Source: Octopus bimaculoides (Eukaryota). Taken from it: DNA of 64,000 bases. Position numbers and translations under genes: made by a program. Below are positions 3,034-58,506 of this stretch, one piece after another; positions within the stretch are counted from its first letter, which is position 1; each line of letters opens with the position of its first letter. The notes beneath the pieces were generated by a model, which saw nothing but the letters and a program-made list of their open reading frames with translations, was not told where the DNA came from and made no database searches. The stretch is from positions 26,044,103 to 26,108,102 of the forward strand of contig NC_069006.1 of NCBI RefSeq assembly GCF_001194135.2. The letters run 5' to 3'.

Positions 3034-3230
3034 TGTTTGCCTTTCACCACTTGACAATTAATGTGGGTTTGTTTACATCCCCATAACTTAGCAGTTTGTC
3101 AAAAAGGGCCGATAAACTAAGTACCTGACTTAAAATTAGTGGGGTCAATTCGATCAACTAAAAAGCTCCTTTGAAGCAGTGCTCCAGCCTGGTCATAGCC
3201 CAGTGACTGAAACAAGTAAAAGAATAAAAA
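3031..3230 (+). mobile_element. SINE family A, 3' half
   Basis: Body and tail (ccccataacttagcagtt...tgactgaaacaagtaaaaga) are shared with 3245-3612. Confidence 0.75.
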
Positions 3231-3244
3231 TAAATTACAAATGA

Positions 3245-3612
3245 AGGCATGGCTGTGTGGTAAGAAGCTTGAGTTCCAACCACATGGTCCTGGGTTCAGT
3301 CCCACAGCATGGCATCTTGGGTAGTTGTCTTCTACTATAGCCTTGGGAGTGGATCTGGTGGACAGAAACTGAAAGAAGCCTGCTAGATATATGTGTGTGT
3401 GTGTGTTTGTCTTCCATCACTGCTTGACAACAAGTGTTGGTGCATTTATATCCCCACAACTTAGCAGTTCAGCAGTTATTTTATCAGAGACTGATAAAAT
3501 AAGTACCAGGTTAAAAAAAATTAAGCCCTGGGGTTGTTGTATTTGACTAAAAATTCTCCAAGGTGGTGCCCCAGCATGGCCACAGTCTAATGATTGAAAC
3601 AAGTAAAAGATA
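3245..3612 (+). mobile_element. tRNA-derived SINE family A, near full length
   Basis: Pol III-like head (ggcatggctgtgtggtaagaag...gggttcagtccc), internal (TG)n and 3' tail gactgaaacaagtaaaaga. More than 10 related copies occur in the window. Confidence 0.85.
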
Positions 3613-6600
3613 CAAGACCTACCCACCCACCCACACACACAGATATATGCATGCATGAGTGGCTCACAATAGCATGCTCCAAATACACACACACACACAC
3701 ACACTGCTGCAGGTTTGTGTCGAGTGGCTGTGAGGTTGTTATTGCTGTCGGCATAACATTGTCTTCGAACGTTAACTTGTGTTATTTGCAATGAGAAAAC
3801 TACATTAAGACTCTCACACGGCCTAAAATGAATTTTCCATTCTATTTGTATTTCTGTGTGAATTTATTTAATCTGTTATAAATATTGGTTTCTATGGAAA
3901 CCAATAAAATTCTGACCAAAGAAATATGCAAAATAAATGCACAACCATTTTTTTCTTCTTTTTCTTCTGACCTTTTGTTCTTGGCACCACAAACCATTTT
4001 GTTATTTTGCTTTGTTTCTAATAAGCCAACATAATTAAGATTACCACACTCTAATAATTATAGGAACTACTGGATAAAGGAATGGGTTCTTTTTTTTGGG
4101 GGGGGGGGTTGTATCACTTGATGAATCATATCTCTACATGGATGCCTGTCCCAGTTCAGATCTCTGCAAATTCCATTTCAATGTTTATTGAATAATTCCT
4201 GGAACCGTTAACAACTCTAAAACAATTGGTGTTAATTTCTGAGAAAGACATGGTAACTGGATCTATTGTTTCAGTTTTTAATGCAGGATATTTGTTACGA
4301 GAATGTTTGTCTGTACTTGAGCTGTGGTGCCAGAAAGAGAGAAGGACAGAAAGCTGAGAGTAGTGGAAATTGCAGTTTGGATTTGAGCTCTCAGAGAAAT
4401 TATGACCTGGTTTTCATTCCTAGTAAATTTTCTCACATCAAATATCCTTTAAAATAATGATTTTCAACACAGTTCTTTTGGTTGAGAGATTTCTGTGAAT
4501 TACCTAAATCAGTGGTTCCCAAAGTGGGTGGTATCCCCCCCCCCCCNNNNNNNNNNNNNNNNNNNNNNNNNNNNNNNNNNNNNNNNNNNNNNNNNNNNNN
4601 NNNNNNNNNNNNNNNNNNNNNNNNNNNNNNNNNNNNNNNCAGATCGAACTGTCTCAACTGCCTGAAACAGTAGGGACTTCTGGTAACTTGACTGAGGAAA
4701 GAAGGCCACGAATGAACCATCTTTATTTTGCCTTTCCTAATTGTTGTTTCTCCCGTCTGCCTTTGTATCATCTCTCTGTCTGAATATTTTATTGTCCTCT
4801 ATTGCACTTTTGTTCCATTTTATATATATATATATATATATACACACACATACATACACATGTACCCATATGTATATATTTGTGTGTGTGTATGTATTCA
4901 TGTCTATATAAGTAAATGAATGAGGTTAATGACATCCAAACAGATGTTTTAGTCTCATTTCAGCTTAAACTTTTCAAGTCAAGTCGACTATTTTACATCC
5001 CTGTTGAGTTTCATAAACTAAATCTCAGGAAATTGAAGTTGCTGCACTTGTCTCTTATGCCTCCCCCTTTTCCTCATCTCACCTCAAACAGTTCGTTATA
5101 TTACTTAACAGATTGGATAATTTGGCATTAATGAAGCCAGATGTGAAATAAGTATTGACTTTTGGAATTGAGGAAATCATTCCAATTTCCTTTCATTTCT
5201 GTCATTCCATCTCACTCATGTTTCGTGTATCTCTGAAGTAGGTTTAGCTACAGTTGGGTGGCCTACATTTTCTTAGTGCCTTCTCTGTTTATGGAGTGTT
5301 TGAGCTAAATTAGGTCCAGTTTTGAACCTGAACTCTTGTAATATGGTAAGACTCTTGGAATCTAAGGAATCTGAAAATGATGGTCTGCCTTTGTAGCAAC
5401 TGTAGAGATCTTTGGCTTCGTGGTTAGGGTGCTGGTCTCATGATTGTAAGATTGTGATTTCAATTCCTACCATGGCTAGAGTGTGTGCCACCCAGGGTAG
5501 CCCTTCAGTTTTGTGGTCATTGTTCTGCCAACATTTCTTCTCTTTAAGCTTTGCTAATCTACAGAATCCAGCTTCCTGGTAATGAAACATGACATGGTGG
5601 TCGTTGCCGGATTATCTTTGATCAGAGGTCTGTGCAAGCAGGGCTGACCTGAGGCTGGAATGACAACAACAACAAACTCTTCCCAGCAAGAAGAACAAAC
5701 ATTAGGAGAAAAGGGGTTTCATGTTTGTTTTTCTTGGTGGCATAGATTATTGTTGTTGTTGATATTGTTGTTGTTGTTTAGCCCAGGGTCAGCTCTGAAT
5801 GAGCTGATTCATGGAGAGAAAGGATGTTGGCGATGATGACAGCAATGATGGGAGTTGATGGGATTGAAGTTGGTGATGGTGGTGATAGTGGTGGTATGAT
5901 GGTAGTTGTGGTGGTGGTGGTGGTAGTGGTGGTAGTGGTTGTTGTAGTGGTGGTGGTAGTGGTGGTATGATGGTGGTGGTGACACCAACGATGATGATGC
6001 TGATGATAGTAGTGGTGTTTTTTATGATGATGATGATGATGATGATAACAATGGGGGGGGGTAGTGCTGAAAAAAAATCCCCCCCTCCACCGCCGCTGCC
6101 CAATGTTTATGTGATGTGAACATAAACAATAGCCCTGAAGATTGATTATAACAATCTGCTGTGGTATGTCAAAAAAAAACATAAAAAAAGCAAAAGAACA
6201 GTATCCAAAAAAAAAGCAACAAAAATGCCTCTGGACAATAGAATCCCAACAACAACAACAACAACAACAGAAATAATAGTCTTTTTTCATTTCTTTCTTT
6301 TTCTTTCCTGTTCCTTAAAGGCTTTATAGTGTTTTGAACAGGAAATGAGAGGTTGTGACATTGATGCCTTTAGTTAAGAGTATATTGAGGAGGGGGGAGA
6401 TTAAAATAGGACACAGGGGGGAGTGACTAAAGTACTAAACTCAATCCCCCCCCCGGTGGCGGGGTGAGGTGGGGGGTAGGACAAGAGTAGAGTGGGGGTG
6501 GAGGTCGGAGGGTGGAATCAATGAGCTGCCCTCTCTCTCTCTTTTTTTCCCCTGCTGATGGCTTCTTTTAAAAGAAAATAAAAGAACCAAAAAGACAAAA

Positions 6601-6799
6601 AAGAAAATATTTTAAATTAAAAGACAAAAAATGGGAGAAAAAAAATCTCAGTAAAATTGATCATTGTTTATTGAACATGTTACATGTTGTAAGGCATGGG
6701 GGGATGGCGGAGGTTTGGGTGGGTGGGTGGCTTATTGATTTTTCTGTTGGCTGGTCTTACTTAAAAACAACTGCTATTGTTCGGAACGGTCTAACTGGT

Positions 6800-7098
6800 G
6801 TTGCCATAGTAACCATTGATAGTGTTCCGCACTTCCATACACTCCTACCCCACCCTCCTCAGCTGCTTTTACCATAGTAACCAGGTGGGGGGTGGTTTAG
6901 TGGTCGCACTGTTGTTACTATGGTAACCAGTGCGATTGTGCATTGGCGTCCGTTATTGTTGCCATAGTAACTCTTGACAATGTCTAATAGTCCAGCAGTT
7001 GTTACCATAGTAACCAGGGGCAGTATTTAGTGGTCTGTTGTTACCATCGTAACCAGTGCTATTGTCCATTCGCTTCCCCCAGTTGTTACCATAGTAAC
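6800..7098. promoter_or_regulatory. Homotypic cluster of seven RFX X-box-like palindromes
   Basis: GTTGCCATAGTAAC 6800, TTTACCATAGTAAC 6868, GTTACTATGGTAAC 6914, GTTGCCATAGTAAC 6958, GTTACCATAGTAAC 7001, GTTACCATCGTAAC 7040, GTTACCATAGTAAC 7085. Five match the X-box consensus GTHNYY-AT-RRNAAC on one strand; 6868 and 7040 each have one mismatch. Confidence 0.7.
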
Positions 7099-7190
7099 CA
7101 GGGACAGCCTTTCCTTCTTAAATCTACACTAAATCTAATGAGCTAAGACGCTTTTAAACTGGGACACACACACACACACACACACATATA

Positions 7191-7410
7191 CGAGGGGGTC
7201 CTGAAAAGTTCTGGTTTTGGGTAAAAGAAAATACAGGAGGATCAGTTAATTATGATTTTATCCAACATATTCCCCTCCTCTCAGATTCACACACTTATCG
7301 CTGTGGTCCTTCAGTATTTCTAAGACCTGTAAAAGAACTCAGAAGGTTGGGCCTCCAGCCAGGCCTTTCATGAAACCCTTAAAGCTGGGAACTTTTCAGC
7401 TCCCCCCCCA
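7191..7410. mobile_element. mariner-derived MITE (~220 bp)
   Basis: TIRs cgagggggtcctgaaaagttc and gaacttttcagctcccccccc, with TA on both sides (7189-90, 7411-12). Confidence 0.85.
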
Positions 7411-7450
7411 TATATGTATATATATATGTGTGTGTGTGTGTATGTGTGTG

Positions 7451-7483
<33 letters not shown>

Positions 7484-7494
7484 ATATATATATC

Positions 7495-8053
7495 ATTTAA
7501 CTAATAACCTTGTATGAAGTTAGAGGTTTCGATCTGTATCTAGAAATATATTTTTTAATATTTCTGTATAAACACGAAGAAAAAAAAATAAATAAAGACT
7601 CACCTTCTTCCCTCATCCTGACCAGGCTTGAACCCTGGACAGGACAGTTCAGAATGTTCACCTTACCCAGTTCATCTACACTTACCTTTACCTACTAGTC
7701 AACCGAGTGCCCACACAAATTGCTGTCAAAAATGAGATACTTAAATCTATAATAGTGTCCAATCAATAATAAAAATAGATTTAAATATCTCATTTTTGAT
7801 CTGTTTTTCAGGTGTTGGTTTGATGGCCTAGTAGGTAAAGGTGTTAGTAATTTAACTACTAACCTTGGTTGAAGATAGAGGTTTCAATCTCTATCTAGGA
7901 AATATATTTTTTAATATTTTTGCATAAATGAACAAAAAAAAATAAAAGGACTCTCTCCTCCTTCCCTCATCCTGACAAGGCTTGCAACCTGGACAGGTAA
8001 GTTTAGAATGTTCACCTCACCCAGTTCATCTACACTCACCTTTACCTACTAGC
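7495..8053. repeat. Tandem ~200-bp duplication with inverted tRNA-like cassettes
   Basis: 7500-7698 resembles 7856-8053. ctagtaggtaaaggt (7827-7841) is the reverse complement of acctttacctactag (7684-7698 and 8039-8053). The spacer carries a 24-bp inverted repeat (7726-7749 / 7776-7799). Confidence 0.8.
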
Positions 8054-8055
8054 CT

Positions 8056-8372
8056 GACTGGCCTTCGTGGGATTTTCGAGCGAGATCGTTGCCAGTGCCC
8101 CTGGACTGGCTCTTGTGCGGGTGGCACATAAAATGCACCATTTTGAGCGTGGCCGTTGCCAGTACCGCCTGACTGGCGTTTCGTGCGGGTGACACATAAA
8201 AGCACCCACTACACTCTCTGAGTGGTTGGCGTCAGGAAGGGCATCCAGCTGTAGAAACTCTGCCAAATCAGACTGGAGCCTGGTGTTGCCATCCGGTTTC
8301 ACCAGTCCTCAGTCAAATCGTCCAACCCATGCTAGCATGGAAAGCGGACGTTAAACGATGATGATGATGATA
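8056..8372 (+). mobile_element. Retroposon family D (RTE-type 3' tail ending (GAT)n)
   Basis: Internal repeats gccggtggcac.taaaa.gcacc and tail ccaacccatgctagcatggaaagcggacgttaaacgatgatgatg. Related copies at 28147, 47522 and 63322. Confidence 0.8.
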
Positions 8373-8820
8373 CTTTGTACGCAGGTTTTGTGTCTATGTT
8401 ACGACAGCAGCAGCGGCAGCAGCAGCAGCCCCCTGTTATCATCATCATAATGATCATCAGCAACAGAAACAGGTGTGGTGGAGACAAGATCACTGTTAGA
8501 AGCTGTATAAACATCAGATTTACAGAAGCCGTGTTCATTATCACGACAATCTGCATCTTGAACATCTCCAGCTTCCTGACAGATTCCCTACAAAACCGAT
8601 TCCTTTGCTTTTCCTTGCAGACACCCTTCCTCATCCCGTTCTATGAAAGCCAGGTGATGGTCGTTTAAGATGAGATTTTTCACAGCTCAACTTACTAAAC
8701 TGTTCAACAGATTAAGGGATTTCCAGAGAATTTCTTAGATTTCCTGGCTTTTCTTGTGTCATATTGGTTTTTGGTAAACAAAGAACCTTATACATATTCA
8801 TACATACATGCATACATACA

Positions 8821-8854
<34 letters not shown>

Positions 8855-9352
8855 CATATATACATACATATACATGCACATGTACATACACACACACACA
8901 AACATATGCATATATATATGTGTGTGTATATATAAAATATATGTATACACATGTACAAGTACATATATACACGCACTCGCATATGCACATAAATATAATG
9001 CATGTGTGTGTGTGTATATATATATGCGTTATGTATGTATATACATATATATTATGAATGTATATACATGTGTGTGTGAAATATTCTTCATAAGATTCTA
9101 TCAACTTCAAACTTGTTGTATCTCATCTTTAGATAACCGAAAGTGTGGAGGTGAGAAACGGTGGGAGATGATTTGATAGAATCAAACAAATTCTTCCCTT
9201 CTCTGCTATGGAGACAGTGACATAAGGGGGGGGGGCAGTGTAAAAAAGCCCACCAAAATCATGATAGCCTTCTTTATTACTCATTATCTGAAACTGCCTT
9301 TAAATTGTATATTAAAGGGGTCTTAGCCATCCGATGATTTTTCTTGTCTTTT

Positions 9353-9715
9353 TTTTTATGGTTTACTTGCTTCAGTCATTTGACTGCAGCCATACTGGAG
9401 CATTGCTTTGGAGGGGTTTGTTCGAACAAATCAACCCCAGGACTTGTTTTTTTGGTTTCAGTTTTAAGCCTGGTACTTAATCTATCAGTCTCTTCTGATA
9501 GTGGTTAAGTGGTGATGGGGAACAAACACACACACTCACACTCACACTCATATATACACGATGGGCTTCCTTCTGTTTCCATCAACCAAATCCACTCACA
9601 AGTGTTTGGTTGGCCTGCAGTTATAGTAGAAGTCACTTACCCAAGGTGCCACACAGTAGGTCTGAACCCAGAACCATGTGGTTGGGAAACAAGCTCCTTA
9701 CCATGCTGCCCTGCC
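9353..9715 (-). mobile_element. SINE family A, near full length, minus strand
   Basis: Reverse complement of the head, body and tail of 3245-3612. Confidence 0.85.
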
Positions 9716-10854
9716 AGTGCCTATATTAGTAAAACACTTATTCCAACTAGTCAGACAATTAGAAACCTCATACACCACGAATAATTGGTTCAGGGCTGTG
9801 TTTTAAAAGTACAAAACCACTGCAACCTAACAATGCAGATTTGTGGAAGAAATAACATCAGAGGCATGCAGACAGTTTTTGTTTCATTTACAGATTTACA
9901 TCTTTTTTCCTTCCATTTTTCTTTCTTTTGTTTTCCTGTTAAAAGAGAGTTTGATAGGTCTGCAAACTTTGACATTTAAATTGTGTTTTCTGGGCCGATT
10001 TTTTAATTTTTTTTTTTGTCATCTGGTATGGGAATATTGTTTTAAAGCTTGTCTTTCCAATGTGTCTATTCGCTTACCCTGACATGATCTTACATTTGTG
10101 AACTCTTTTCTGAGAACGAGCTGCAATAATTAAATATTACAATTAGAAGGATGAGTGAGGGCTTTTATCATTAATGCTACACTACATCCTTCTCTTTCAA
10201 ATGGGGTACCTAACTCAGACAAAATAGTCTCTGAAGTGGGCCTTTTTTTATGTTTTCATTGTCCTTCCTGTCACTAACCCTTACCTGTTTTTCAAGCAAG
10301 GGATTTCTTATTCCACTCAGACTTCAAGACATGGAGTGGATGATGCAAACTGTCTCATAGGAAGTTGTATTTGATGAGAAACTGGTGATGAGTGGGTTAA
10401 ACTTGAAATCGGGTGGAGAGAAAATAGAATTGCAGAAGCATTTCACAGACTTTCTTAGTTTCAAAGCACAAATCAAGATAAGTAAACAATGAAAGGAATA
10501 AATGAAATAAATAAATATCAACTAAAATATAAATAAATATTGAGTAAAAATATTGACGAAATATCCAGCTTTGAAAGTTTCGAGAAATATCTGGGCAATC
10601 TTTAAATAAAGAGCCATTCCTTAAGTAAATAGAGATAAGTTTGTAGAAGACATTGATGTTGGAAGGTATTTTGGTAACCGGGTAAGGAGAGAGAGAGAGA
10701 GAGAGAGAGATAACCGATAGTGGTGATGATGAAGTGGTGGTGGTGGTGGTGGTGATGGTGCTATGGGCAGAAATACACGCACACATACTGAACAGTGAAT
10801 GTATGTGTATTTTTGTGAATACTTGCATCTGGGCTACTTTATACATCATTGTGT

Positions 10855-24545: not shown

Positions 24546-26456
24546 ACCATGTATGTACGAGTCTGCGAAGGCGCATGTGGATGGTTGTTCACCCTGCTAG
24601 AAACAACAGCCACGTTTCTTTCAAATCGCATCCAACTATTATTGCGTTACTTTTTTTTAAATGATAAAACAAACTGGATGGTCGTTGATGGAACGCCTTA
24701 TGTCTTGTTCAGTCAGTCCTGTCCCCGTAGCTAAACAATCACCACATGTGTGTGTGTGTACACACACATACACTTACACACAAGGGTGGAAGCCATGTGC
24801 TGTATGTATATATTAAGTGAATGCAACTTGTCATTCATGTTTAATGAGCGACGAAGAATAGGACAAACACGATTAATGGATAATAATAATGTTAAGAGGA
24901 TTTTTATTATCAAACTTGTTCCCTTTCAGGCATAATTAGTTTCTGATTGCCTTCGTCGAACCATTGTTATCCTCGTGTCGTTTTAATTAACTAAAACTCA
25001 TTAGTTAACTCCATCAACGATGCTTTTCACTCAAACTTTACTTTCGGAGAAATTTGACAGAAGTCGTGGTAGAACAGACAGACCCTTCGTCATAAGCCAA
25101 TCCTGCCGTGACACCTACCCTCTTACTTAGTTGTTGTTTAGCACCAGGTCAGTCCCGATAGGGCTGACAGACTATTGATCACAAGCCAATCCAACGATGG
25201 CCATACCATCTCGTCTAGCTGTTGTTTAGCTTTAAAAAAGTTAGTATCAGACAGCGCTGACAGACCGTTGAGGAATCAAATCTTGTTCCGTCCGTGACCA
25301 CACCGTCTGTTTGTCAGAGATACGGAGACTACGACAACAATAACAACAAAATTATCTATCCGCTGTCCTTTTTTTATGATGACAGTGAGGGGAATACAAC
25401 TGTTATTTCTAGCATAGAGGTTCGTTCAGTGAATGCAAGCATAGGTAAATTAGGACACACACATACAATGTACAATACATAAACACACATACAATAGACA
25501 ATATATACACACACACACACGCACTCAACATTCTTGACATCCAAAAGTAAATATAGATCTTTCCCCCCCCCTCAAATGTGTGTGTGTGTTCGGTGCCAGT
25601 CACTTCTTTGTACAGACATTATCAAAGATAGATAGAGGGTTTGTAACTTCTTAAGGATCCGCTCCCTGATCCCCACACCCACCACACTCACACACAAACC
25701 GTTCTCCGTCTCTGTAGTCGTGGGTATATATATGCGTGTGCGTATGTGTGCTTATATATATATGTGTGTGTGTGTGTGTGTATATATACATGTGTATATA
25801 ATGTGTTGTAGGTTTTTGTTTTTGTTTTTGTTTTCGTTGTATCTAATTATCTGGAGTGTGTTGCCAGATTGATTGGCAGCGACCCACTTACCGTTTCCTG
25901 TAGACAAGAAGCTGCTAGGTTTTCTCGACAAACCCATAGAATTGTCTTCTATTTGTAAACACAAACCGTTTTCTTCTTCCCCTCCTCCCCCATCACTCAC
26001 CAACCTCTCCCGTCTTTCTCACTCAGCTGACATATTTCGCCGCACTCCCCCGATACACACACACACACACTTAAATGCATACACGCACACATACAGATAT
26101 ATACATATATGCTTTTGCCTACATACACAGACATATGTATATACCTAGACATTAGNNNNNNNNNNNNNNNNNNNNNNNNNNNNNNNNNNNNNNNNNNNNN
26201 NNNNNNNNNNNNNNNNNNNNNNNNNNNNNNNNNNNNNNNNNNNNNNNNNNNNNNNNNNNNNNNNNNNNNNNNNNNNNNNNNNNNNNNNNNNNNNNNNNNN
26301 NNNNNNNNNNNNNNNNNNNNNNNNNNNNNNNNNNNNNNNNNNNNNNNNNNNNNNNNNNNNNNTATATATATATACACTTATATACACACACTCGAGTATC
26401 TCTCATTAGTTTTCCATGTCATGTAATGTCGTTTGTAATATATATCTCTATATCTT

Positions 26457-29951: not shown

Positions 29952-31319
29952 TGACATATGTATGCAAAATTATTCATATATCAGTCTATATACGTATATA
30001 TATATATATATNNNNNNNNNNNNNNNNNNNNNNNNNNNNNNNNNNNNNNNNNNNNNNNNNNNNNNNNNNNNNNNNNNNNNNNNNNNNNNNNNNNNNNNNN
30101 NNNNNNNNNNNNNNNNNNNNNNNNNNNNNNNNNNNNNNNNNNNNNNNNNNNNNNNNNNNNNNNNNNNNNNNNNNNNNNNNNNNNNNNNNNNNNNNNNNNN
30201 NNNNNNNNNNNNNNNNNNNNNNNNNNNNNNNNNNNNNNNNNNNNNNNNNNNNNNNNNNNNNNNNNNNNNNNNNNNNNNNNNNNNNNNNNNNNNNNNNNNN
30301 NNNNNNNNNNNNNNNNNNNNNNNNNNNNNNNNNNNNNNNNNNNNNNNNNNNNNNNNNNNNNNNNNNNNNNNNNNNNNNNNNNNNNNNNNNNNNNNNNNNN
30401 NNNNNNNNNNNNNNNNNNNNNNNNNCCCTCCCTCCCTCTCTCTCTCTCTCAACCCTTCCTCCCTTATCCCACCCCTCCCTCTGCTTTCCCTATAAATCAA
30501 CCTACCTTTACTAGGTCAATCTTGCTGTAAGGAAATGGTTATAACTGATGAAAGAACTCTTATATTAGAGTAGGGAGTCACAGACTTTGTTGCCATGGTT
30601 ACTTGCCTGCAATTGCATTATATTGTGTTGTTTGTATTTTTTTTTTGTTTTTTCTTTGTATTTTTGTTTCATTTTTTTTTTAATTCTAATTTTTCACCTC
30701 TCCCGTCTGGCACCCCACCCACATCTTATTTGTACCCTTTCAACACTTATTGCAGGTATTTTACACCCCATATCTTTCCTGTGTTCCTTTTGTCTTCCCT
30801 GACAACATAAAAGAGATGAGTATCTACGTATGCATGCGTGTGTACACGTGTGTGTGCATTTGTGTGGGTGCAAGACTTATGATGCCTTGCTCCCCGCACT
30901 GTCAAACCTTAATGCAATGGTTATGCAATTTACGTAATTTATCCTTCTCTCGCTCTCCTCATCTCATACAACGATACAATTAAATTAAAATCCATTTCCT
31001 CCATCCCTTCATATTCTCCCGTTGGAAACGGGTGACAATAAAAAGCCAAATTATATTTTGAAATCCAAAGACAGTTTGTAAGACGTCTGTTAGTTTGGTT
31101 ATGGTGTAGAATCAATATTTATTCTTCGTGTCAAGCAAACTTACTAAAATCACCGACAGACTTCTCTTTGCATTCTATTATGATTGTTACTTGCTAAGTT
31201 CCTTAGATTCAGATTTTGTTAAGGTTATTTCTACAGATATTCTACAGAAACCATAGAAAGTGCTACTGACTTATAAAAACGGTGTACTTCATAGGATATC
31301 AAGCTTGCATAATGAAGTA

Positions 31320-54464: not shown

Positions 54465-56379
54465 AAAAAAAAGATAAATTTGTTGAAGAATTTTATGATA
54501 CAATAAAAAAAATAAAAATTTAGTTAAAAATAAACCAGAATCTAGGGTCAGTCAGTTTCTAATTGAGCCGTTCCTTTCTGAAGTGTGTGTCACAATTGAA
54601 TCCAGTTCTTTGAAATGGTAAAAATGAAAGGAATCCATTCAAGTGCTTTTAACAATAGCTGTTTGTAAATGTTAAGTAGCACCTGTTGTTTTTGTTGTTT
54701 TAATCTCATCATGATAAGAGAAACTTGGAGAATCATTTGAATCATTTCAAATGAGATTAAATGTTTTGCACTTCACACATTCTCTATACATTATCAGGAA
54801 AAATACAGCAACTCAACACAATTAATCAATTGATTTTTACATGAATTTCATTTTAAAACTGTTTGATGCTTTGCAAAATTATGCAATTAACCAAATAAAA
54901 AACAATTATCTGGTATGCAATTAAGTAGAGTCAAATGATATATGTACGGAGACATAAGCTTTTAACGGTTCCAGCCAGTGGACTGTTAACCACACTGGTT
55001 AGGTTTCAGGACCTCTTCACCTGCTAGAAATGGCAGCCAAATCTCCCTTATCTCTCTCTCTCTCGCTCTGACATACACACACACACACACACATATAAAA
55101 GTAAGATTGGTCATGATTGGAACGCTTTTGATCATTGGTTGTTCAACCTTGCCTAAAATAGAGGCAATGGTCAAAGCTAAATACTAATGACTGTGTGTGT
55201 GTGTGTAAGCGTTTGTATGTATGTAAGTGGTGGTTATTTGTTAATTAGAACAGGGGGCTCCAACCACCAGAAAAAGCTTGGTGACTTCTGACTTAGAGAA
55301 CCACTACCATGGCATACACAGTATGGTCATCTGGGTATTTTAGTGTCCAGGCAGTTCCTGTGTACCTGCTATTGTTTGACCATAGGTCAGTTTCATCAAA
55401 GCAGACTTATGGTCAAACACATTCCATGTGTGACCAGAATACGAGGTGATTTGGCTGCTCTGCCTAGCAAGGCCAAGTGACCTTGTAAGGTACAAAAACC
55501 ATAACTGCAGTCCAAGGCCCAGTGAATGAAATGGAGTTTAGGAGACATACCATACTTGGGCTCCTGGTGACAATACATCTTGCTTGTATTTAATGGTTTA
55601 GAAAAAGGGCTTGGAAGAAGTAATACACCCCCCCCCCCCATCCTGCATCATCTTAAGGTATGGATACACTGGACAGTTGTTGCCACAGGTCCAAGGACAC
55701 CACAAATCTAAGCGCCAATTCTGATCTATGTATACCATGGTTTGCTATCAATAAATAAATACTAGAGGGCTCAGAGCATTGATTTGCTTGGGAGCCTCGT
55801 GTGTCTCAGGGCCTAATCAGACCTATGTATGCTGTAATTTGTTGCCAATAAATAAATACTATAGGACTGAGTATATTGGGAACCTCACAGGTGTAGGGGC
55901 GTACTTCAAATCGATGAAGGGCCCAGTGCATTGAGTTGTCTGGAGGCCAATAATATGGCTAAGATGGCCCTAACCCCATCCCTGATAAAACTCTCTCTGA
56001 GGATACCCTGCCTAATGCATTCTGAATACAGTACTTGGATCTGATGAAATGATTGTATAGGCTGGGCAGGCCATAATGTTGTTGTTATTTGTGTGTGTTT
56101 AATGGAGCCTGTGTGGGAGTGGTAGCGAGATATGCTTGATGTTTTGTATGTGTAGTTGTCTATCGGACGGCGGCGGTGGTGATGGTGGTGGTGGTGGTTG
56201 TAGTAGTAGTAGGCAACACCAGCAGTATATTACAGTCACTAAACTAAATTTGTCTACTCATTATTGACAATACAAAAGTCACTGGAAATATTTGGACAAG
56301 AAAAAAGAAAGACTACGGTTGACAGGAAGTAGATTCCACTTGTTAAACACTCAACATACGTATACATACCTATACACAC

Positions 56380-56878
56380 ACACACACACACACACAGAGA
56401 CAGACGTCAGAATGACATATCTGTCGTGATCCTGAGAAACTGGCTTCTGAGCGCTCTTCTTCTTCTTCTTCAAATGGTGGTGGTTGTTGGTTCTTAAAGG
56501 AAATAATTATTAAAACATTGCAGTCGCTCATAAAAGCATGTCAAGTATTTCTCTACGATGTTATGAAGCTATTTGGCAAGGAAATCATCCAGCCCTTTAT
56601 TATAACATTAGCAACCTGGACTTCGTAGCACTGGGTTCATTTATCGGATTTTCTTATTCGGGAAATTTTTACCGATTGCAAACAACAAGTCTTCGAGTTT
56701 GGTGACGTCCACAGGAACGTTACAAGGAAACACACACTCAAACGCATACACACTCTTCACACACACAACAAACACACACACGTGTTAGCAAGTTAATCGT
56801 CAGAAAACGTTTTGATCTTATAAGATTTTTGCTGGTTTCAAAACCTTTTCTTTTAATTCTCTTGTCTCTAATCTGAAC

Positions 56879-56912
<34 letters not shown>

Positions 56913-56998
56913 TGTATGATTAATGTAAACATTTAGGTGTGTAAACTGCGATTCGTAACAGCTGACTTGAAGAGGAAGTGTGTGCACACACATACATC

Positions 56999-57034
<36 letters not shown>

Positions 57035-57196
57035 CTGTTGCTCCTTCCAGCAGTTGTCATAAGAACTTGCAGCAGGTAAAACATTTGAAACTGGTCAAAA
57101 CCACCGGTCCTTAACCGCTAATCAAGATCTTTCTAAACATATATACTTATGTAGATATAATATCTATATCTGTGTATATACTAATTGTATTTCGAC
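56380..57196 (+). promoter_or_regulatory. Candidate promoter/5' UTR of the 57197 exon, with CRE-like sites
   Basis: CpG-enriched and TE-poor; GACGTCA 56403 and TGACGTC 56703. Confidence 0.35.
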
Positions 57197-57375
57197 ATGT
57201 CTTTGGAGGACAAATATTTACCGGCCGAAACCTGGTCCCTGTCGTCGTCGTCCAGCGAGGACCTTCACGGCGCAGGCGAGGACGACGGCGGCGGCGGCGG
57301 CGCCGATCAGCGACGATCCAAAAAGAAAATGTCGCGGATTAAAAGACATTCGTCCCTCTTGAAGAAACTACTCAG
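57197..57375 (+). CDS. Candidate alternative first coding exon (MSLEDKYLPAETWSLSSSSSEDLHGAGEDDGGGGGADQRRSKKKMSRIKRHSSLLKKLL, phase 2), unidentified gene
   Basis: GC/CpG-rich open frame with an upstream in-frame TAA (57182) and purine at -3. Donor AG|GTAGGT at 57376 sits just before the stop; the peptide is protein-like. Confidence 0.6.
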
Positions 57376-57875
57376 GTAGGTACCAATCCCAACCATGACC
57401 ATCACCCCCCACCGACTACTATTTTTACAACTTTAATTTACTTCGAATAAGTTTCTTTTTTGTGACTTTCTACTTTCTCTTCGCCTCTCCACGTTTTATG
57501 ACTAATTCATTCACCTGTCCAGGTGTACCCATGCTTTATTTCTCTCTCTCTCTCTCACGCACGCTGCTAAAAATAACAGCTAAATCTCCCTCGGATGATC
57601 TCACTGTACCGCCGTCAGTTAAGGACAGTTTCCAGCCCGTCGCTGAGGGGGTTCACTGGACGGCACTGTACCCAACGCTCCTCATTATTCAATGGTACAC
57701 CCTTACATCTATTGTGATACACTGATTTCGAAACTCCGCAGCAAAGTCTGGGGACCGACCCGGACGGTTTCCATAATGTAGGCCTCAGTCCGACTCCCTC
57801 GCACAGTGGAGGCGCATGGAATGTCACTGTTGGAATGTCTTGCTTTGTTCGACCACGACTGACCTGGGGCTAAGC

Positions 57876-57925
<50 letters not shown>

Positions 57926-58225
57926 ATATATATATATATATAAATATATACATATATATATATATACATATGTAATATATATAAAATCTTCCCTTTTAAG
58001 GTCACCATATTTCTTTCGCTTCCTTTTCCTCACTTTTCTTTTCCTTTAAAATAGATACGGTATGTTGACAAATATGTTGTGTCTATATAAGTATGTGTGT
58101 GTATAAAAAACACCGACATTGTGTGTTTAAATTCGTTCGTGTTTGTTATGATGTATATAAGTTGCCCACGCATAAACATTCATTTCTAGTGTATAATGTG
58201 TTTAATACACGCATTCCTAATGCGT

Positions 58226-58320
58226 GTGTGTGTATACACATGCATATACATACGTGTGTGTGTATACACATGCATATACATACGTGTGTGTGTGTATATA
58301 TATACATGCATACGCGTGTA
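58226..58320. repeat. 30-bp tandem repeat x3
   Basis: gtgtgtgtatacacatgcatatacatacgt units. Confidence 0.7.
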
Positions 58321-58506
58321 TGTGGATGTAATCTGTCAATTATGTAACCCTACAAGTCGTCTAAGAAAGTTCCACATTTTTATTTGTTCCATTTTGTCTG
58401 GATTTGTTTGGTTCAGGGTGTGTTTTGTTTGTTTTGTTTGTGTATGTGTGTGGTGCTTATTATGTGTATGCATGTATGTAATGTGTGTGTGTGTGTGTTG
58501 TTTGTC

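What the first reader, a model, noticed from the sequence alone, without database searches (positions are those of the whole stretch)
6800..7098. Phased array of seven RFX X-box palindromes in 300 bp
Seen: seven 14-mers of the form GTT(A/G)C(C/T)AT(A/G/C)GTAAC (one starts with T) at 6800, 6868, 6914, 6958, 7001, 7040 and 7085. The last five spacings are 46, 44, 43, 39 and 45 bp, about four helical turns. The spacers show the array arose by tandem duplication (6861-6957 resembles 6995-7084), yet spacers diverged with indels while the 14-mers stayed nearly intact; site 3 is the exact reverse complement of site 5. Established: GTHNYY-AT-RRNAAC is the X-box bound by RFX/DAF-19 dimers, which control ciliary and neural genes and usually act through one or two sites. 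Inference: a repeat-born, high-avidity RFX enhancer under selection, upstream of the CpG island at 21-23 kb.
Basis: partly seen in the sequence, partly recalled or inferred. Interest (0 to 1): 0.75.

Follow-up and report, generated by a model that had tools for sequence, protein, structure and literature searches.

The report
Tandem array of seven RFX X-boxes
A 300-bp stretch of this (apparently cephalopod) genome carries seven copies of a 14-base palindrome identical to proven binding sites of the cilia-gene regulator RFX; local duplication made it, and it may be a multi-site RFX docking platform, but whether it regulates a gene or is just a repeat could not be tested.

Summary
Seven X-box-like 14-mers lie at the stated coordinates (chance expectation 0.23 matches in 64 kb). 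The spacings are 68/46/44/43/39/45 bp, and a three-unit block duplication is visible (6860-6971 vs 6993-7098, 78.8% identity).

Five sites match GTHNYYATRRNAAC perfectly. They are letter-for-letter the validated C. elegans osm-6, bbs-7 and osm-5 X-boxes and score near the median of validated sites.

Cores are 79-100% identical pairwise, while most spacers are no more alike than random sequence. The few core substitutions fall where RFX tolerates them (P=0.011-0.054). This points to core-specific constraint, but for the two clearly homologous spacer pairs the contrast is not significant (p=0.10).

"Helical phasing" is not supported (p=0.18).

A rival reading was tested and rejected: minus-strand GYYGNN peptide repeats. 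The frame breaks and there are no homologues among 1.84 billion proteins.

No gene, transposon hallmark or RNA family was found at the array. It sits in CpG-depleted, SINE-rich DNA.

Copy number in the genome and conservation at orthologous loci could not be tested. Tandem arrays built on the same palindrome occur in other eukaryotic contigs, some clearly dispersed repeats, so a neutral or transposon-derived minisatellite remains a serious rival.

Verdict: a credible candidate, function unproven.

The parts
6790..7112 (.). Whole array: seven units of a conserved ~24-nt block (CWGTT-GTTRCYATRGTAAC-CAGKG) separated by diverged spacers of two alternating types. Type A follows sites 2, 5 and possibly 7. 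Type B follows sites 1, 3 and 6.
6800..6813 (.). X-box 1, GTTGCCATAGTAAC. Identical to the C. elegans bbs-7 X-box; its reverse complement is the osm-5 X-box. 19.4 bits.
6868..6881 (.). X-box 2, TTTACCATAGTAAC. G1 is lost; this is the weakest site (11.4 bits).
6914..6927 (.). X-box 3, GTTACTATGGTAAC. Exact reverse complement of sites 5 and 7 (the osm-6 X-box on the other strand). 17.8 bits.
6958..6971 (.). X-box 4, GTTGCCATAGTAAC. Same sequence as site 1. 19.4 bits.
7001..7014 (.). X-box 5, GTTACCATAGTAAC. Identical to the validated osm-6 X-box. 17.8 bits.
7040..7053 (.). X-box 6, GTTACCATCGTAAC. Position 9 is C, one mismatch to the consensus. 14.6 bits.
7085..7098 (.). X-box 7, GTTACCATAGTAAC. 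Identical to the osm-6 X-box. 17.8 bits.
6860..6971 (.). Older copy of the three-unit block (sites 2-4). It is duplicated as 6993-7098 (sites 5-7) at 78.8% identity.
6993..7098 (.). Younger copy of the three-unit block (sites 5-7).
6745..6794 (.). Probable decayed edge unit ('unit 0'). The B-type spacer is still recognisable: 6766-6780 AACAACTGCTATTGT is 87% identical to 7051-7065. The X-box core is lost.
   Evidence: (family D8)

Best explanation
The array is a locally amplified, minisatellite-like run of units whose only well-kept part is a canonical RFX X-box.

Shown:
- There are seven sites in 300 bp. Five are identical to X-boxes that drive DAF-19/RFX-dependent expression in C. elegans.
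- The array grew by tandem duplication, most recently of a ~130-bp three-unit block.
- Cores stayed about 89% identical, while most spacers drifted to random-level similarity.

Inferred:
- Each core is bound by a dimer of the winged-helix factor RFX.
- The ~44-bp centre-to-centre spacing lets up to seven dimers sit side by side without clashing.
- The array would therefore act as a high-occupancy (homotypic-cluster) RFX-responsive cis-element. It is most likely a distal enhancer active in ciliated or neuronal cells, and it could equally be a repressive RFX platform.
- Possible targets are the CpG-rich promoters at about 21.5-26 kb or 57 kb.
For: - Enrichment: 15 strand-matches against 0.23 expected. 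Five sites match GTHNYYATRRNAAC perfectly, against 0.52 strand-matches expected.
- Sequence identity to the validated osm-6, bbs-7 and osm-5 X-boxes (PMC3245922).
- PWM scores of 14.6-19.4 bits for six sites, against a training median of 18.4. Seven of the 13 window positions scoring at least 10 bits lie in these 300 bp.
- Core versus spacer: pairwise core identity is 11-14 of 14. Spacer identity is 0.31-0.58 for all pairs except 2/5 and 3/6; random sequence gives 0.47 +/- 0.05.
- Spacers are not decayed cores.
- Core substitutions cost only 3.2 bits in total on a PWM built without the identical sites. Random placement costs 19.6 bits on average (P=0.011).
- The double change in site 3 merely flips the site.
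- Multimerised X-boxes (3x) are sufficient for reporter expression in ciliated neurons (bioRxiv 10.1101/2021.02.03.429678). Multiple X-boxes tune expression level (PMC3245922).
- The window contains an independent, classically placed X-box (57053), 144 bp upstream of an ATG exon in a CpG island.
Against: - There is no evidence of binding, chromatin accessibility or conservation in other species. None of these is testable here.
- No gene or exon was found within 1-13 kb. Known functional X-boxes lie 60-300 bp from the ATG.
- The array is CpG-depleted (o/e 0.40) inside a CpG-depleted, probably germline-methylated region (o/e 0.25-0.32). It does not show the signature of an unmethylated regulatory island.
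- It is flanked by an A-rich tail (6560-6650) and a SINE-type (TG)n tail (7164-7198).
- For the clearly homologous unit pairs the core/spacer contrast is not significant (p=0.10).
- Conservation extends asymmetrically 5 nt beyond the X-box on each side. A symmetric RFX dimer does not explain this.
- X-box positions 3 and 11, which carry little information for RFX, are nevertheless invariant.
- Arrays built on the same palindrome occur as ordinary minisatellites or dispersed repeats in other eukaryotic contigs.
Confidence: 0.42

Rival explanations
1. Neutral or transposon-derived minisatellite. On this reading the array is a fragment of a repeat: for example the internal tandem 'monomers' or promoter region of a mobile element, or a plain local minisatellite. 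Its core resembles an X-box either incidentally or because the element once used RFX for its own expression. It would have no present function for the host. The apparent core conservation would reflect the element's past life, or the small sample.
For: - A metagenome scan for two such 14-mers 20-50 nt apart returned 24 loci.
- Many are tandem arrays with one X-box per unit: L010/L018/L005 (44-bp unit), L008 (47 bp, 11 units), L017/L007 (53 bp), L004 (23 and 31 bp), and L003/L016/L022 (18 bp).
- L005/L010/L018 share flanks, as do L007/L017, so they are dispersed repeats.
- L002 looks like a MITE with terminal inverted repeats and two X-boxes.
- Homologous contigs L003/L016/L022 differ in unit number, which is typical minisatellite behaviour.
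- The octopus-type array lies in SINE- and microsatellite-rich, CpG-depleted DNA with no gene nearby.
- The core/spacer contrast for unambiguous homologues is not significant.
Against: - Unlike those other arrays, which are homogeneous across the whole unit, only the core is kept here.
- No second copy of the array or its flanks exists in the 64-kb window.
- No TIR, LTR or bracketing direct repeat was found in 4640-10400.
- No transposase or reverse-transcriptase-like ORF was found in 1-13 kb.
- Core substitutions are biased towards RFX-tolerated changes.
- The metagenome result has no control pattern, so enrichment of this palindrome in repeats is not established.
Confidence: 0.4
2. Binding platform for a factor other than RFX. 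The kept block is about 24 nt and asymmetric (CWGTT-core-CAGKG). The selected feature could therefore be a longer site for another sequence-specific protein, for example a multi-zinc-finger protein, or a composite of RFX plus a partner. Candidate partner motifs are a Myb-like CAACTG on the minus strand of units 5 and 7, and SOX-like YATTGT in the B spacers.
For: - Flank positions -5, -3, -1, +15, +16 and +19 are kept in 6-7 of 7 units, and the flanks are not palindromic.
- X-box positions 3 and 11, which carry little information for RFX (0.54 and 0.51 bits), are invariant.
- YATTGT recurs in the B-type spacers.
Against: - Flank conservation can be residual identity from recent duplication.
- The 14-mers are exact copies of functional X-boxes.
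- The variable core positions (4, 6, 9) are those that the X-box consensus leaves degenerate.
- No alternative factor was tested. The partner motifs are short and were recalled from general knowledge.
Confidence: 0.1
3. Decayed coding repeat. On the minus strand the conserved 21 nt read P-G-Y-Y-G-N-N. The array could therefore be the remnant or terminal exon of a gene for a Gly/Tyr/Asn-rich repetitive protein, with an AATAAA on the minus strand at 6668-6673.
For: - The minus-strand frame reads EGKAVPGYYGNNWGKRMDNSTGYDGNNRPLNTAPGYYGNNCWTIRHCQELLWQQ*. Units 7, 6 and 5 are in one frame, with spacings of 45 and 39 nt.
- The conserved block equals 7 codons.
Against: - The other four units need frameshifts and run into stops.
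- Most core and flank substitutions would be non-synonymous (read directly from the sequence).
- There is no protein homologue. The k-mer/phmmer search of 5.8 billion proteins gave none at E<=0.01. The exhaustive phmmer search of 1.84 billion representatives gave 0 hits at E<=0.001.
- The local ORFs are not in the protein collection.
- Comparable arrays in other contigs are not spanned by long ORFs either.
Confidence: 0.03
4. Structured RNA or small-RNA locus. The repeated palindromes would form hairpins in a transcript, as in a miRNA or piRNA-like cluster.
For: Predicted folding is more stable than that of shuffles: z=-4.4 on the plus strand and -2.6 on the minus strand.
Against: - Low folding energy is the automatic consequence of seven mutually complementary palindromes.
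- Individual hairpins have only 5-bp stems and 4-nt loops.
- Positions 6 and 9 are never complementary.
- There is no Rfam match in the array, even at E<=1.
- The 44-nt units are too short for pre-miRNAs.
Confidence: 0.02

Closest known systems
Promoter X-boxes of C. elegans ciliary genes (osm-6, bbs-7, osm-5; DAF-19/RFX targets; PMC3245922 Table 1)
   Same: The 14-mer sequences are identical (GTTACCATAGTAAC, GTTGCCATAGTAAC and its reverse complement). They are imperfect inverted repeats matching GTHNYYATRRNAAC.
   Different: The known sites are single copies 60-285 bp upstream of the ATG of a ciliary gene. Here there are seven copies in tandem, with no gene detectable within several kb, in a different phylum, and binding has not been tested.
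Promoters with several X-boxes that fine-tune DAF-19 output (PMC3245922), and synthetic 3x tandem X-box reporters (bioRxiv 10.1101/2021.02.03.429678)
   Same: Several RFX sites act on one target. Multimerised X-boxes are sufficient for expression in ciliated neurons.
   Different: The natural cases have two or three sites of unequal strength near the promoter, and the 3x array is man-made. The present array is natural, has 7 sites, arose by duplication and lies away from any recognisable promoter.
Tandem-repeat-born homotypic clusters of transcription-factor sites ('tandem repeat enhancers', e.g. the MORC3-repressed repeat enhancer, PMC13373173; only the abstract was seen)
   Same: Unit duplication multiplies one factor's binding site into a high-avidity element.
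   Different: The factor and the organism differ. Function has been shown for those cases but not here.
X-box-core minisatellites and dispersed repeats in other eukaryotic contigs found here (L005/L010/L018 with a 44-bp unit; L008 with 47 bp; L017/L007 with 53 bp; L002, MITE-like)
   Same: They carry the same palindromic 14-mer once per unit and have similar periods (44-53 bp).
   Different: Those arrays are homogeneous over the whole unit, and several are multi-copy. There is no sequence similarity to the window array beyond the 14-mer. In the window array only the core is kept.

Membership tests
RFX/DAF-19 X-box binding site | A 13-15-bp imperfect inverted repeat matching GTHNYY-AT-RRNAAC (GTNRCC N0-3 RGYAAC) | tested here: met
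   Five of seven sites match perfectly and two have one mismatch. PWM scores are 11.4-19.4 bits, against a range of 6.3-23.1 for validated sites.
RFX/DAF-19 X-box binding site | Sequence shown experimentally to confer RFX-dependent expression | tested here: met
   The sequences are identical to the osm-6, bbs-7 and osm-5 X-boxes listed as validated in PMC3245922 Table 1. That validation was done in C. elegans, not in this species.
RFX/DAF-19 X-box binding site | Occupied by RFX protein in this organism (ChIP, CUT&Tag or EMSA) | not testable with these tools
   No binding or chromatin data are available.
RFX/DAF-19 X-box binding site | Promoter-proximal position (about 60-300 bp upstream of the ATG) of a ciliary or neuronal gene | tested here: not met
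   No protein match was found for any non-repeated ORF of at least 38 aa in 1-13.1 kb. There is no CpG island at the array. By contrast, the isolated X-box at 57053 does have this layout.
Homotypic TF-site cluster / tandem-repeat enhancer | At least 3 sites for one factor within a few hundred bp, generated by unit duplication | tested here: met
   Seven sites lie in 299 bp. A block duplication at 78.8% identity is visible, and spacers 2/5 and 3/6 are homologous.
Homotypic TF-site cluster / tandem-repeat enhancer | Sites preferentially conserved relative to spacers | tested here: inconclusive
   Cores average 0.89 identity against random-level spacers. With the 4/7 pair included, p=5e-4; for the two unambiguous homologous pairs, p=0.10. 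Substitutions are biased towards RFX-tolerated changes, P=0.011-0.054.
Homotypic TF-site cluster / tandem-repeat enhancer | Enhancer activity, open chromatin, or cross-species conservation | not testable with these tools
   No cephalopod genomes or functional data are reachable. The route to an orthologous locus is closed because no annotated protein maps to the window.
Helically phased binding-site array | Site centres fall on one face of the helix (spacing an integer multiple of ~10.5 bp) | tested here: not met
   R=0.50 and p=0.18 at 10.5 bp per turn. 90% of null arrays do as well after scanning 10-11 bp per turn.
Minisatellite / transposon-internal tandem repeat | Head-to-tail units that are homogeneous over their whole length | tested here: not met
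   Only the ~24-nt block is shared and most spacers are at random-level identity. TRF does not call the array.
Minisatellite / transposon-internal tandem repeat | Many dispersed copies in the genome, and TE hallmarks (TIR, LTR, TSD, TE ORFs) | tested here: inconclusive
   Within the 64-kb window there is no second copy, no bracketing repeats and no TE protein. Genome-wide copy number is not testable here.
Protein-coding tandem repeat (GYYGNN units, minus strand) | An open frame through the units, and homologous proteins | tested here: not met
   The frame breaks between units 5/4, 4/3, 3/2 and 2/1. Protein searches gave 0 hits.
Known RNA family | Match to an Rfam covariance model | tested here: not met
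   No match at the gathering threshold in the window, and none in the array at E<=1.

The most novel reading that the evidence does not exclude
X-box-core tandem arrays may be a recurrent, so far undescribed class of RFX-recruiting repeats in animal genomes. They could be spread by local duplication and by mobile elements, and sometimes sit next to forkhead genes (L020, L021). On this reading the array here would be a domesticated example, in which purifying selection keeps only the RFX cores while the spacers drift. That would make it a natural 7x multivalent RFX enhancer acting at a distance.
Probability: 0.15. Interest if true: 0.65.

Novelty: new member of a known kind. Interest (0 to 1): 0.4.

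Why it matters
RFX factors are the conserved master regulators of cilia genes and also act in neurons and the germline. As far as the papers I could search describe, their natural sites occur singly or in pairs close to promoters.

A natural seven-site array that keeps its cores while its spacers decay would show how simple tandem duplication can build a high-avidity regulatory element. It would be an easy test bed for dose-response of RFX occupancy (1-7 sites) in a cephalopod.

If it instead proves to be one copy of a repeat family, it would be an example of mobile or satellite DNA carrying ready-made RFX sites around a genome. This matters for how ciliary and neuronal gene networks get rewired.

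Either outcome can be decided with one genome-wide BLAST and one accessibility track.

Tried and rejected
1. Coding repeat on the minus strand (PGYYGNN): rejected. The frame breaks. There were no homologues. The local ORFs are absent from the protein collection.

2. Structured RNA: rejected. The low folding energy is a trivial effect of repeated palindromes, and there is no Rfam match.

3. Spacers as decayed cores, i.e. an ancestral ~22-bp satellite: rejected. No spacer resembles the core more than shuffles do (all p>0.17).

4. Helical phasing: rejected.

5. Transposon hallmarks around the array: none found. There is no TIR, LTR or direct repeat in 4640-10400 and no second copy in the window.

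6. Gene hunt, intended to reach orthologous loci. Two 5,000-aa pseudo-proteins were built from non-repeated ORFs of 1-13.1 kb and 20.3-23.4 kb, and of 56.8-64 kb, 23.3-27 kb, 13-20 kb and part of 27-29 kb. Neither gave a hit, so the look-up of encoding contigs could not be used. A first attempt failed on the 5,000-aa length limit.

7. Literature searches for X-box arrays in cephalopods, X-boxes in repeats, and octopus ATAC-seq motifs found nothing on point.

8. The viral-contig scan for paired X-boxes gave 0 hits.

9. The bacterial promoter/terminator scan was uninformative.

10. PAR-bZIP (GTTAC|GTAAC abutting) and HNF1 (GTTAATNATTAAC) were considered from memory as alternative readers of the half-sites. 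They were set aside because the half-site spacing or sequence does not fit. Neither was tested.

Full report
**1. The observation**

- With one mismatch allowed, the pattern gives 15 strand-matches in the 64-kb window. Dinucleotide-preserving shuffles give 0.23 (maximum 2).
- Only one match lies outside the array (30589).
- Spacings are 68, 46, 44, 43, 39 and 45 bp.
- Site 3 is the exact reverse complement of sites 5 and 7.
- A self-BLAST shows that 6993-7098 aligns with 6860-6971 at 78.8% over 113 columns (E=9e-19). No copy of the array exists elsewhere in the window.
- Tandem Repeats Finder misses the array because the units are too diverged overall.

**2. Anatomy**

- Aligning the units (A1) and tabulating positions shows that the kept block is about 24 nt: CWGTT + 14-mer + CAGKG. 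The flanks are not palindromic.
- Spacers come in two alternating kinds. Type A follows sites 2, 5 and possibly 7 (CAGGGG..TTTAGTGGTC..TGTT). Type B follows sites 1, 3 and 6 (CAGTGCKATTGTSCATTSGC).
- A B-type remnant at 6766-6780 (family D8) marks a decayed edge unit whose core is lost.
- The last growth step duplicated a three-unit block of about 130 bp.
- Pairwise, cores are 11-14 of 14 identical (mean 0.89). Among spacers, only pairs 2/5 (0.69) and 3/6 (0.74) exceed what random sequences of the same composition give with the same aligner (0.47 +/- 0.05; 99th percentile 0.59).
- Spacers are not decayed cores.

**3. Is the core an RFX X-box?**

- Five sites match the C. elegans consensus GTHNYYATRRNAAC exactly. 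The expectation is 0.52 strand-matches per window.
- A full-text search for the literal 14-mers found them in Table 1 of PMC3245922. GTTACCATAGTAAC is the validated osm-6 X-box. GTTGCCATAGTAAC is the bbs-7 X-box, and its reverse complement is the osm-5 X-box.
- A PWM built from the 30 validated 14-mers of that table scores the array sites at 19.4, 11.4, 17.8, 19.4, 17.8, 14.6 and 17.8 bits. The training median is 18.4 and the minimum is 6.3.
- Seven of the 13 window positions scoring at least 10 bits lie in these 300 bp. The ranking holds when osm-6, bbs-7 and osm-5 are left out of the PWM.
- From established knowledge, the RFX winged-helix DNA-binding domain and its X-box are conserved across animals. 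Binding by this animal's RFX is therefore very likely, but it is an inference.

**4. Is the core under selection?**

The evidence is mixed.

For selection:
- There is a strong contrast between cores and most spacers.
- The six substitutions that did occur in cores cost only 3.2 bits in total on a PWM built without the identical sites. Random placement costs 19.6 +/- 6.4 bits (P=0.011, or P=0.054 if the A4G shared by sites 1 and 4 is one event).
- The double change in site 3 simply flips the site.

Against selection, or limiting the claim:
- For the two spacer pairs whose homology is beyond doubt, the core/spacer contrast is not significant (25/28 vs 45/63, p=0.10).
- Conservation spills asymmetrically into the flanks.
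- X-box positions 3 and 11, which carry little information for RFX, are invariant.

I read this as suggestive, not demonstrated.

**5. Phasing**

Spacings of 39-46 bp equal 3.7-4.4 helical turns. A Rayleigh-type test gives R=0.50, p=0.18 at 10.5 bp per turn. After scanning 10-11 bp per turn, 90% of null arrays with spacings of 39-46 bp do at least as well. The regular spacing is a legacy of tandem duplication, not helical phasing. It does leave room for seven dimers side by side (inference).

**6. Rival: coding repeat**

- On the minus strand the conserved 21 nt read PGYYGNN. Units 7-6-5 are in one frame: EGKAVPGYYGNNWGKRMDNSTGYDGNNRPLNTAPGYYGNNCWTIRHCQELLWQQ*.
- The other units require frameshifts and hit stops.
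- A frame-corrected 89-aa peptide found nothing at E<=0.01 among 5.8 billion proteins.
- The 53-aa ORF found nothing at E<=0.001 in an exhaustive phmmer search of 1.84 billion representatives.
- Ten local ORFs are not in the collection.

This rival is rejected.

**7. Rival: RNA**

There is no Rfam or tRNA hit. The favourable folding z-scores follow automatically from repeated palindromes. Positions 6 and 9 are never complementary, so a perfect hairpin is not being preserved.

**8. Context**

- The window is draft eukaryotic DNA with 11 N gaps and abundant TG/TA microsatellites and SINE-like repeats. I could not verify the species.
- It is CpG-depleted (o/e about 0.2-0.3), with CpG-rich domains at about 21.5-26 kb (0.56-0.97) and 56-58.5 kb (up to 1.08).
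- The array's own CpG o/e is 0.40.
- It lies between an A-rich tail (6560-6650) and a SINE-type (TG)n tail (7164-7198).
- No TIR, LTR or direct repeat brackets it.
- Two 5,000-aa pseudo-protein queries built from non-repeated ORFs of most of the window found no protein at all.
- As a result, no target gene can be named, and the route to orthologous loci through an encoded protein was closed.

**9. Related sequences elsewhere**

A scan of metagenome contigs for GTTACCATAGTAAC-N20-50-GTTRCYATRGTAAC returned 24 loci. Viral contigs returned none.

Several loci are eukaryotic or animal DNA:
- L017 carries a GT43 glucuronyltransferase exon.
- L021 carries a FOXP-like ORF, with X-box trios just 3' of the ORF.
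- L020 carries a forkhead ORF, also with X-box trios just 3' of the ORF.

Many loci are tandem arrays with one X-box per unit:
- L010/L018/L005 have a 44-bp unit. They share flanks, so they are a dispersed repeat, and they carry a YY1-like AAGATGGCGG.
- L008 has a 47-bp unit in 11 copies.
- L017/L007 have a 53-bp unit.
- L004 has 23- and 31-bp satellites.
- L003/L016/L022 have an 18-bp unit whose copy number varies between homologous contigs (A2).
- L002 looks like a MITE with two X-boxes.

None shares similarity with the window array beyond the 14-mer. No long ORF spans these arrays. These arrays are homogeneous over the whole unit, unlike the window array. Even so, the result shows that X-box-core arrays can be ordinary repeats, which keeps the neutral or transposon-derived rival alive.

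**10. Mechanism and verdict**

Most likely (0.42), this is a duplication-born homotypic cluster of RFX sites that works as a multivalent RFX platform, either an enhancer or a repressive element. Precedents are multi-X-box tuning (PMC3245922) and the sufficiency of 3x synthetic X-boxes (bioRxiv 10.1101/2021.02.03.429678).

Almost as likely (0.40), it is a neutral or transposon-derived minisatellite carrying RFX-like cores. Minor rivals are another factor reading the 24-nt block (0.10), a coding remnant (0.03) and an RNA locus (0.02).

If functional, it is a new member of a known kind (X-box sites; tandem-repeat-born site clusters). Its unusual features are the copy number and the distance from any promoter.

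The deciding data are simple: genome-wide copy number, synteny in related species, and one accessibility or RFX-occupancy track.

Noticed in passing
window 57053-57376: An isolated perfect X-box (GTTGTCATAAGAAC, 12.8 bits) lies 144 bp upstream of a clean ATG-initiated exon. The exon runs 57197-57375 (MSLEDKYLPAETWSLSSSSSEDLHGAGEDDGGGGGADQRRSKKKMSRIKRHSSLLKKLL...) and ends at a CAG|GTAGGT donor. It sits inside the CpG island at 57-58 kb (o/e 1.08). This is the classic promoter-proximal layout of an RFX target gene. The exon found no protein match.
   Followed up: partly
window 3883-3906: A strong isolated X-box (GTTTCTATGGAAAC, 17.8 bits) sits at the centre of a 24-bp near-perfect palindrome, TATTGGTTTCTATGGAAACCAATA. 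The X-box is thus flanked by inverted CCAAT/ATTGG boxes. It lies 2.9 kb from the array.
   Followed up: no
window 30589-30602: This is the highest-scoring X-box of the window (GTAACCATGGCAAC on the minus strand, 20.3 bits). It lies next to an assembly gap (30012-30425) and a T-rich tract. No exon is evident nearby.
   Followed up: no
L001-L024 (metagenome contigs): Tandem arrays built on the same X-box palindrome occur in many unrelated contigs, with periods of 18, 22, 23, 25, 31, 44, 47 and 53 bp. L005/L010/L018 share flanks, as do L007/L017, so they are dispersed repeats. L002 looks like a MITE. No control pattern could be run, so enrichment is unproven.
   Followed up: partly
L021 1975-2059; L020 13-214: Two contigs encoding forkhead-family proteins carry trios of X-box palindromes immediately 3' of the ORF. 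L021 has FOXP-CC and Forkhead domains; L020 has a Forkhead domain. Fox and RFX factors are known partners in cilia programmes. This may be coincidence.
   Followed up: no
L012 2130-2487 (also L009 1577-1874): In GC-rich, prokaryote-like contigs (prephenate dehydratase on L012; TyrRS on the similar contig L011), seven copies of the perfect palindrome TGTTACTATAGTAACA are spaced 52-64 bp apart, with unrelated spacers, in an intergenic stretch. The architecture looks like the window array: conserved palindrome, variable spacers. It presumably serves a different DNA-binding protein.
   Followed up: no
window 21500-26000 and 56000-58500: Two CpG-rich domains (o/e up to 0.97 and 1.08) stand out in an otherwise strongly CpG-depleted window (o/e 0.1-0.4). 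This is the pattern expected of unmethylated promoter regions in a mosaically methylated genome. No coding exon could be matched in the first domain.
   Followed up: partly
window 3120-3416, 9509-9781, 44227-44448, 46777-47118; 7548-7698 / 7902-8052: Several copies of SINE-like elements are present, recognisable by shared pseudo-ORF strings such as YPRCH(A/T)VGLNPEPCGW. They usually end in (TA)n(TG)n microsatellites. There is also a pair of 151-nt direct repeats (81% identical) just right of the array.
   Followed up: no
window 5780-6300: A trinucleotide low-complexity block, (GGT/GAT/AGT)n, gives a 170-aa minus-strand ORF rich in poly-Thr and poly-His. It is probably not coding and is not in the protein collection.
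   Followed up: partly
window 7405-7488: Sub-threshold Rfam hits to mir-297 and mir-1277 (44.6 and 37 bits, far below their gathering scores) are caused by the TG/TA microsatellite. They are not miRNA genes.
   Followed up: yes
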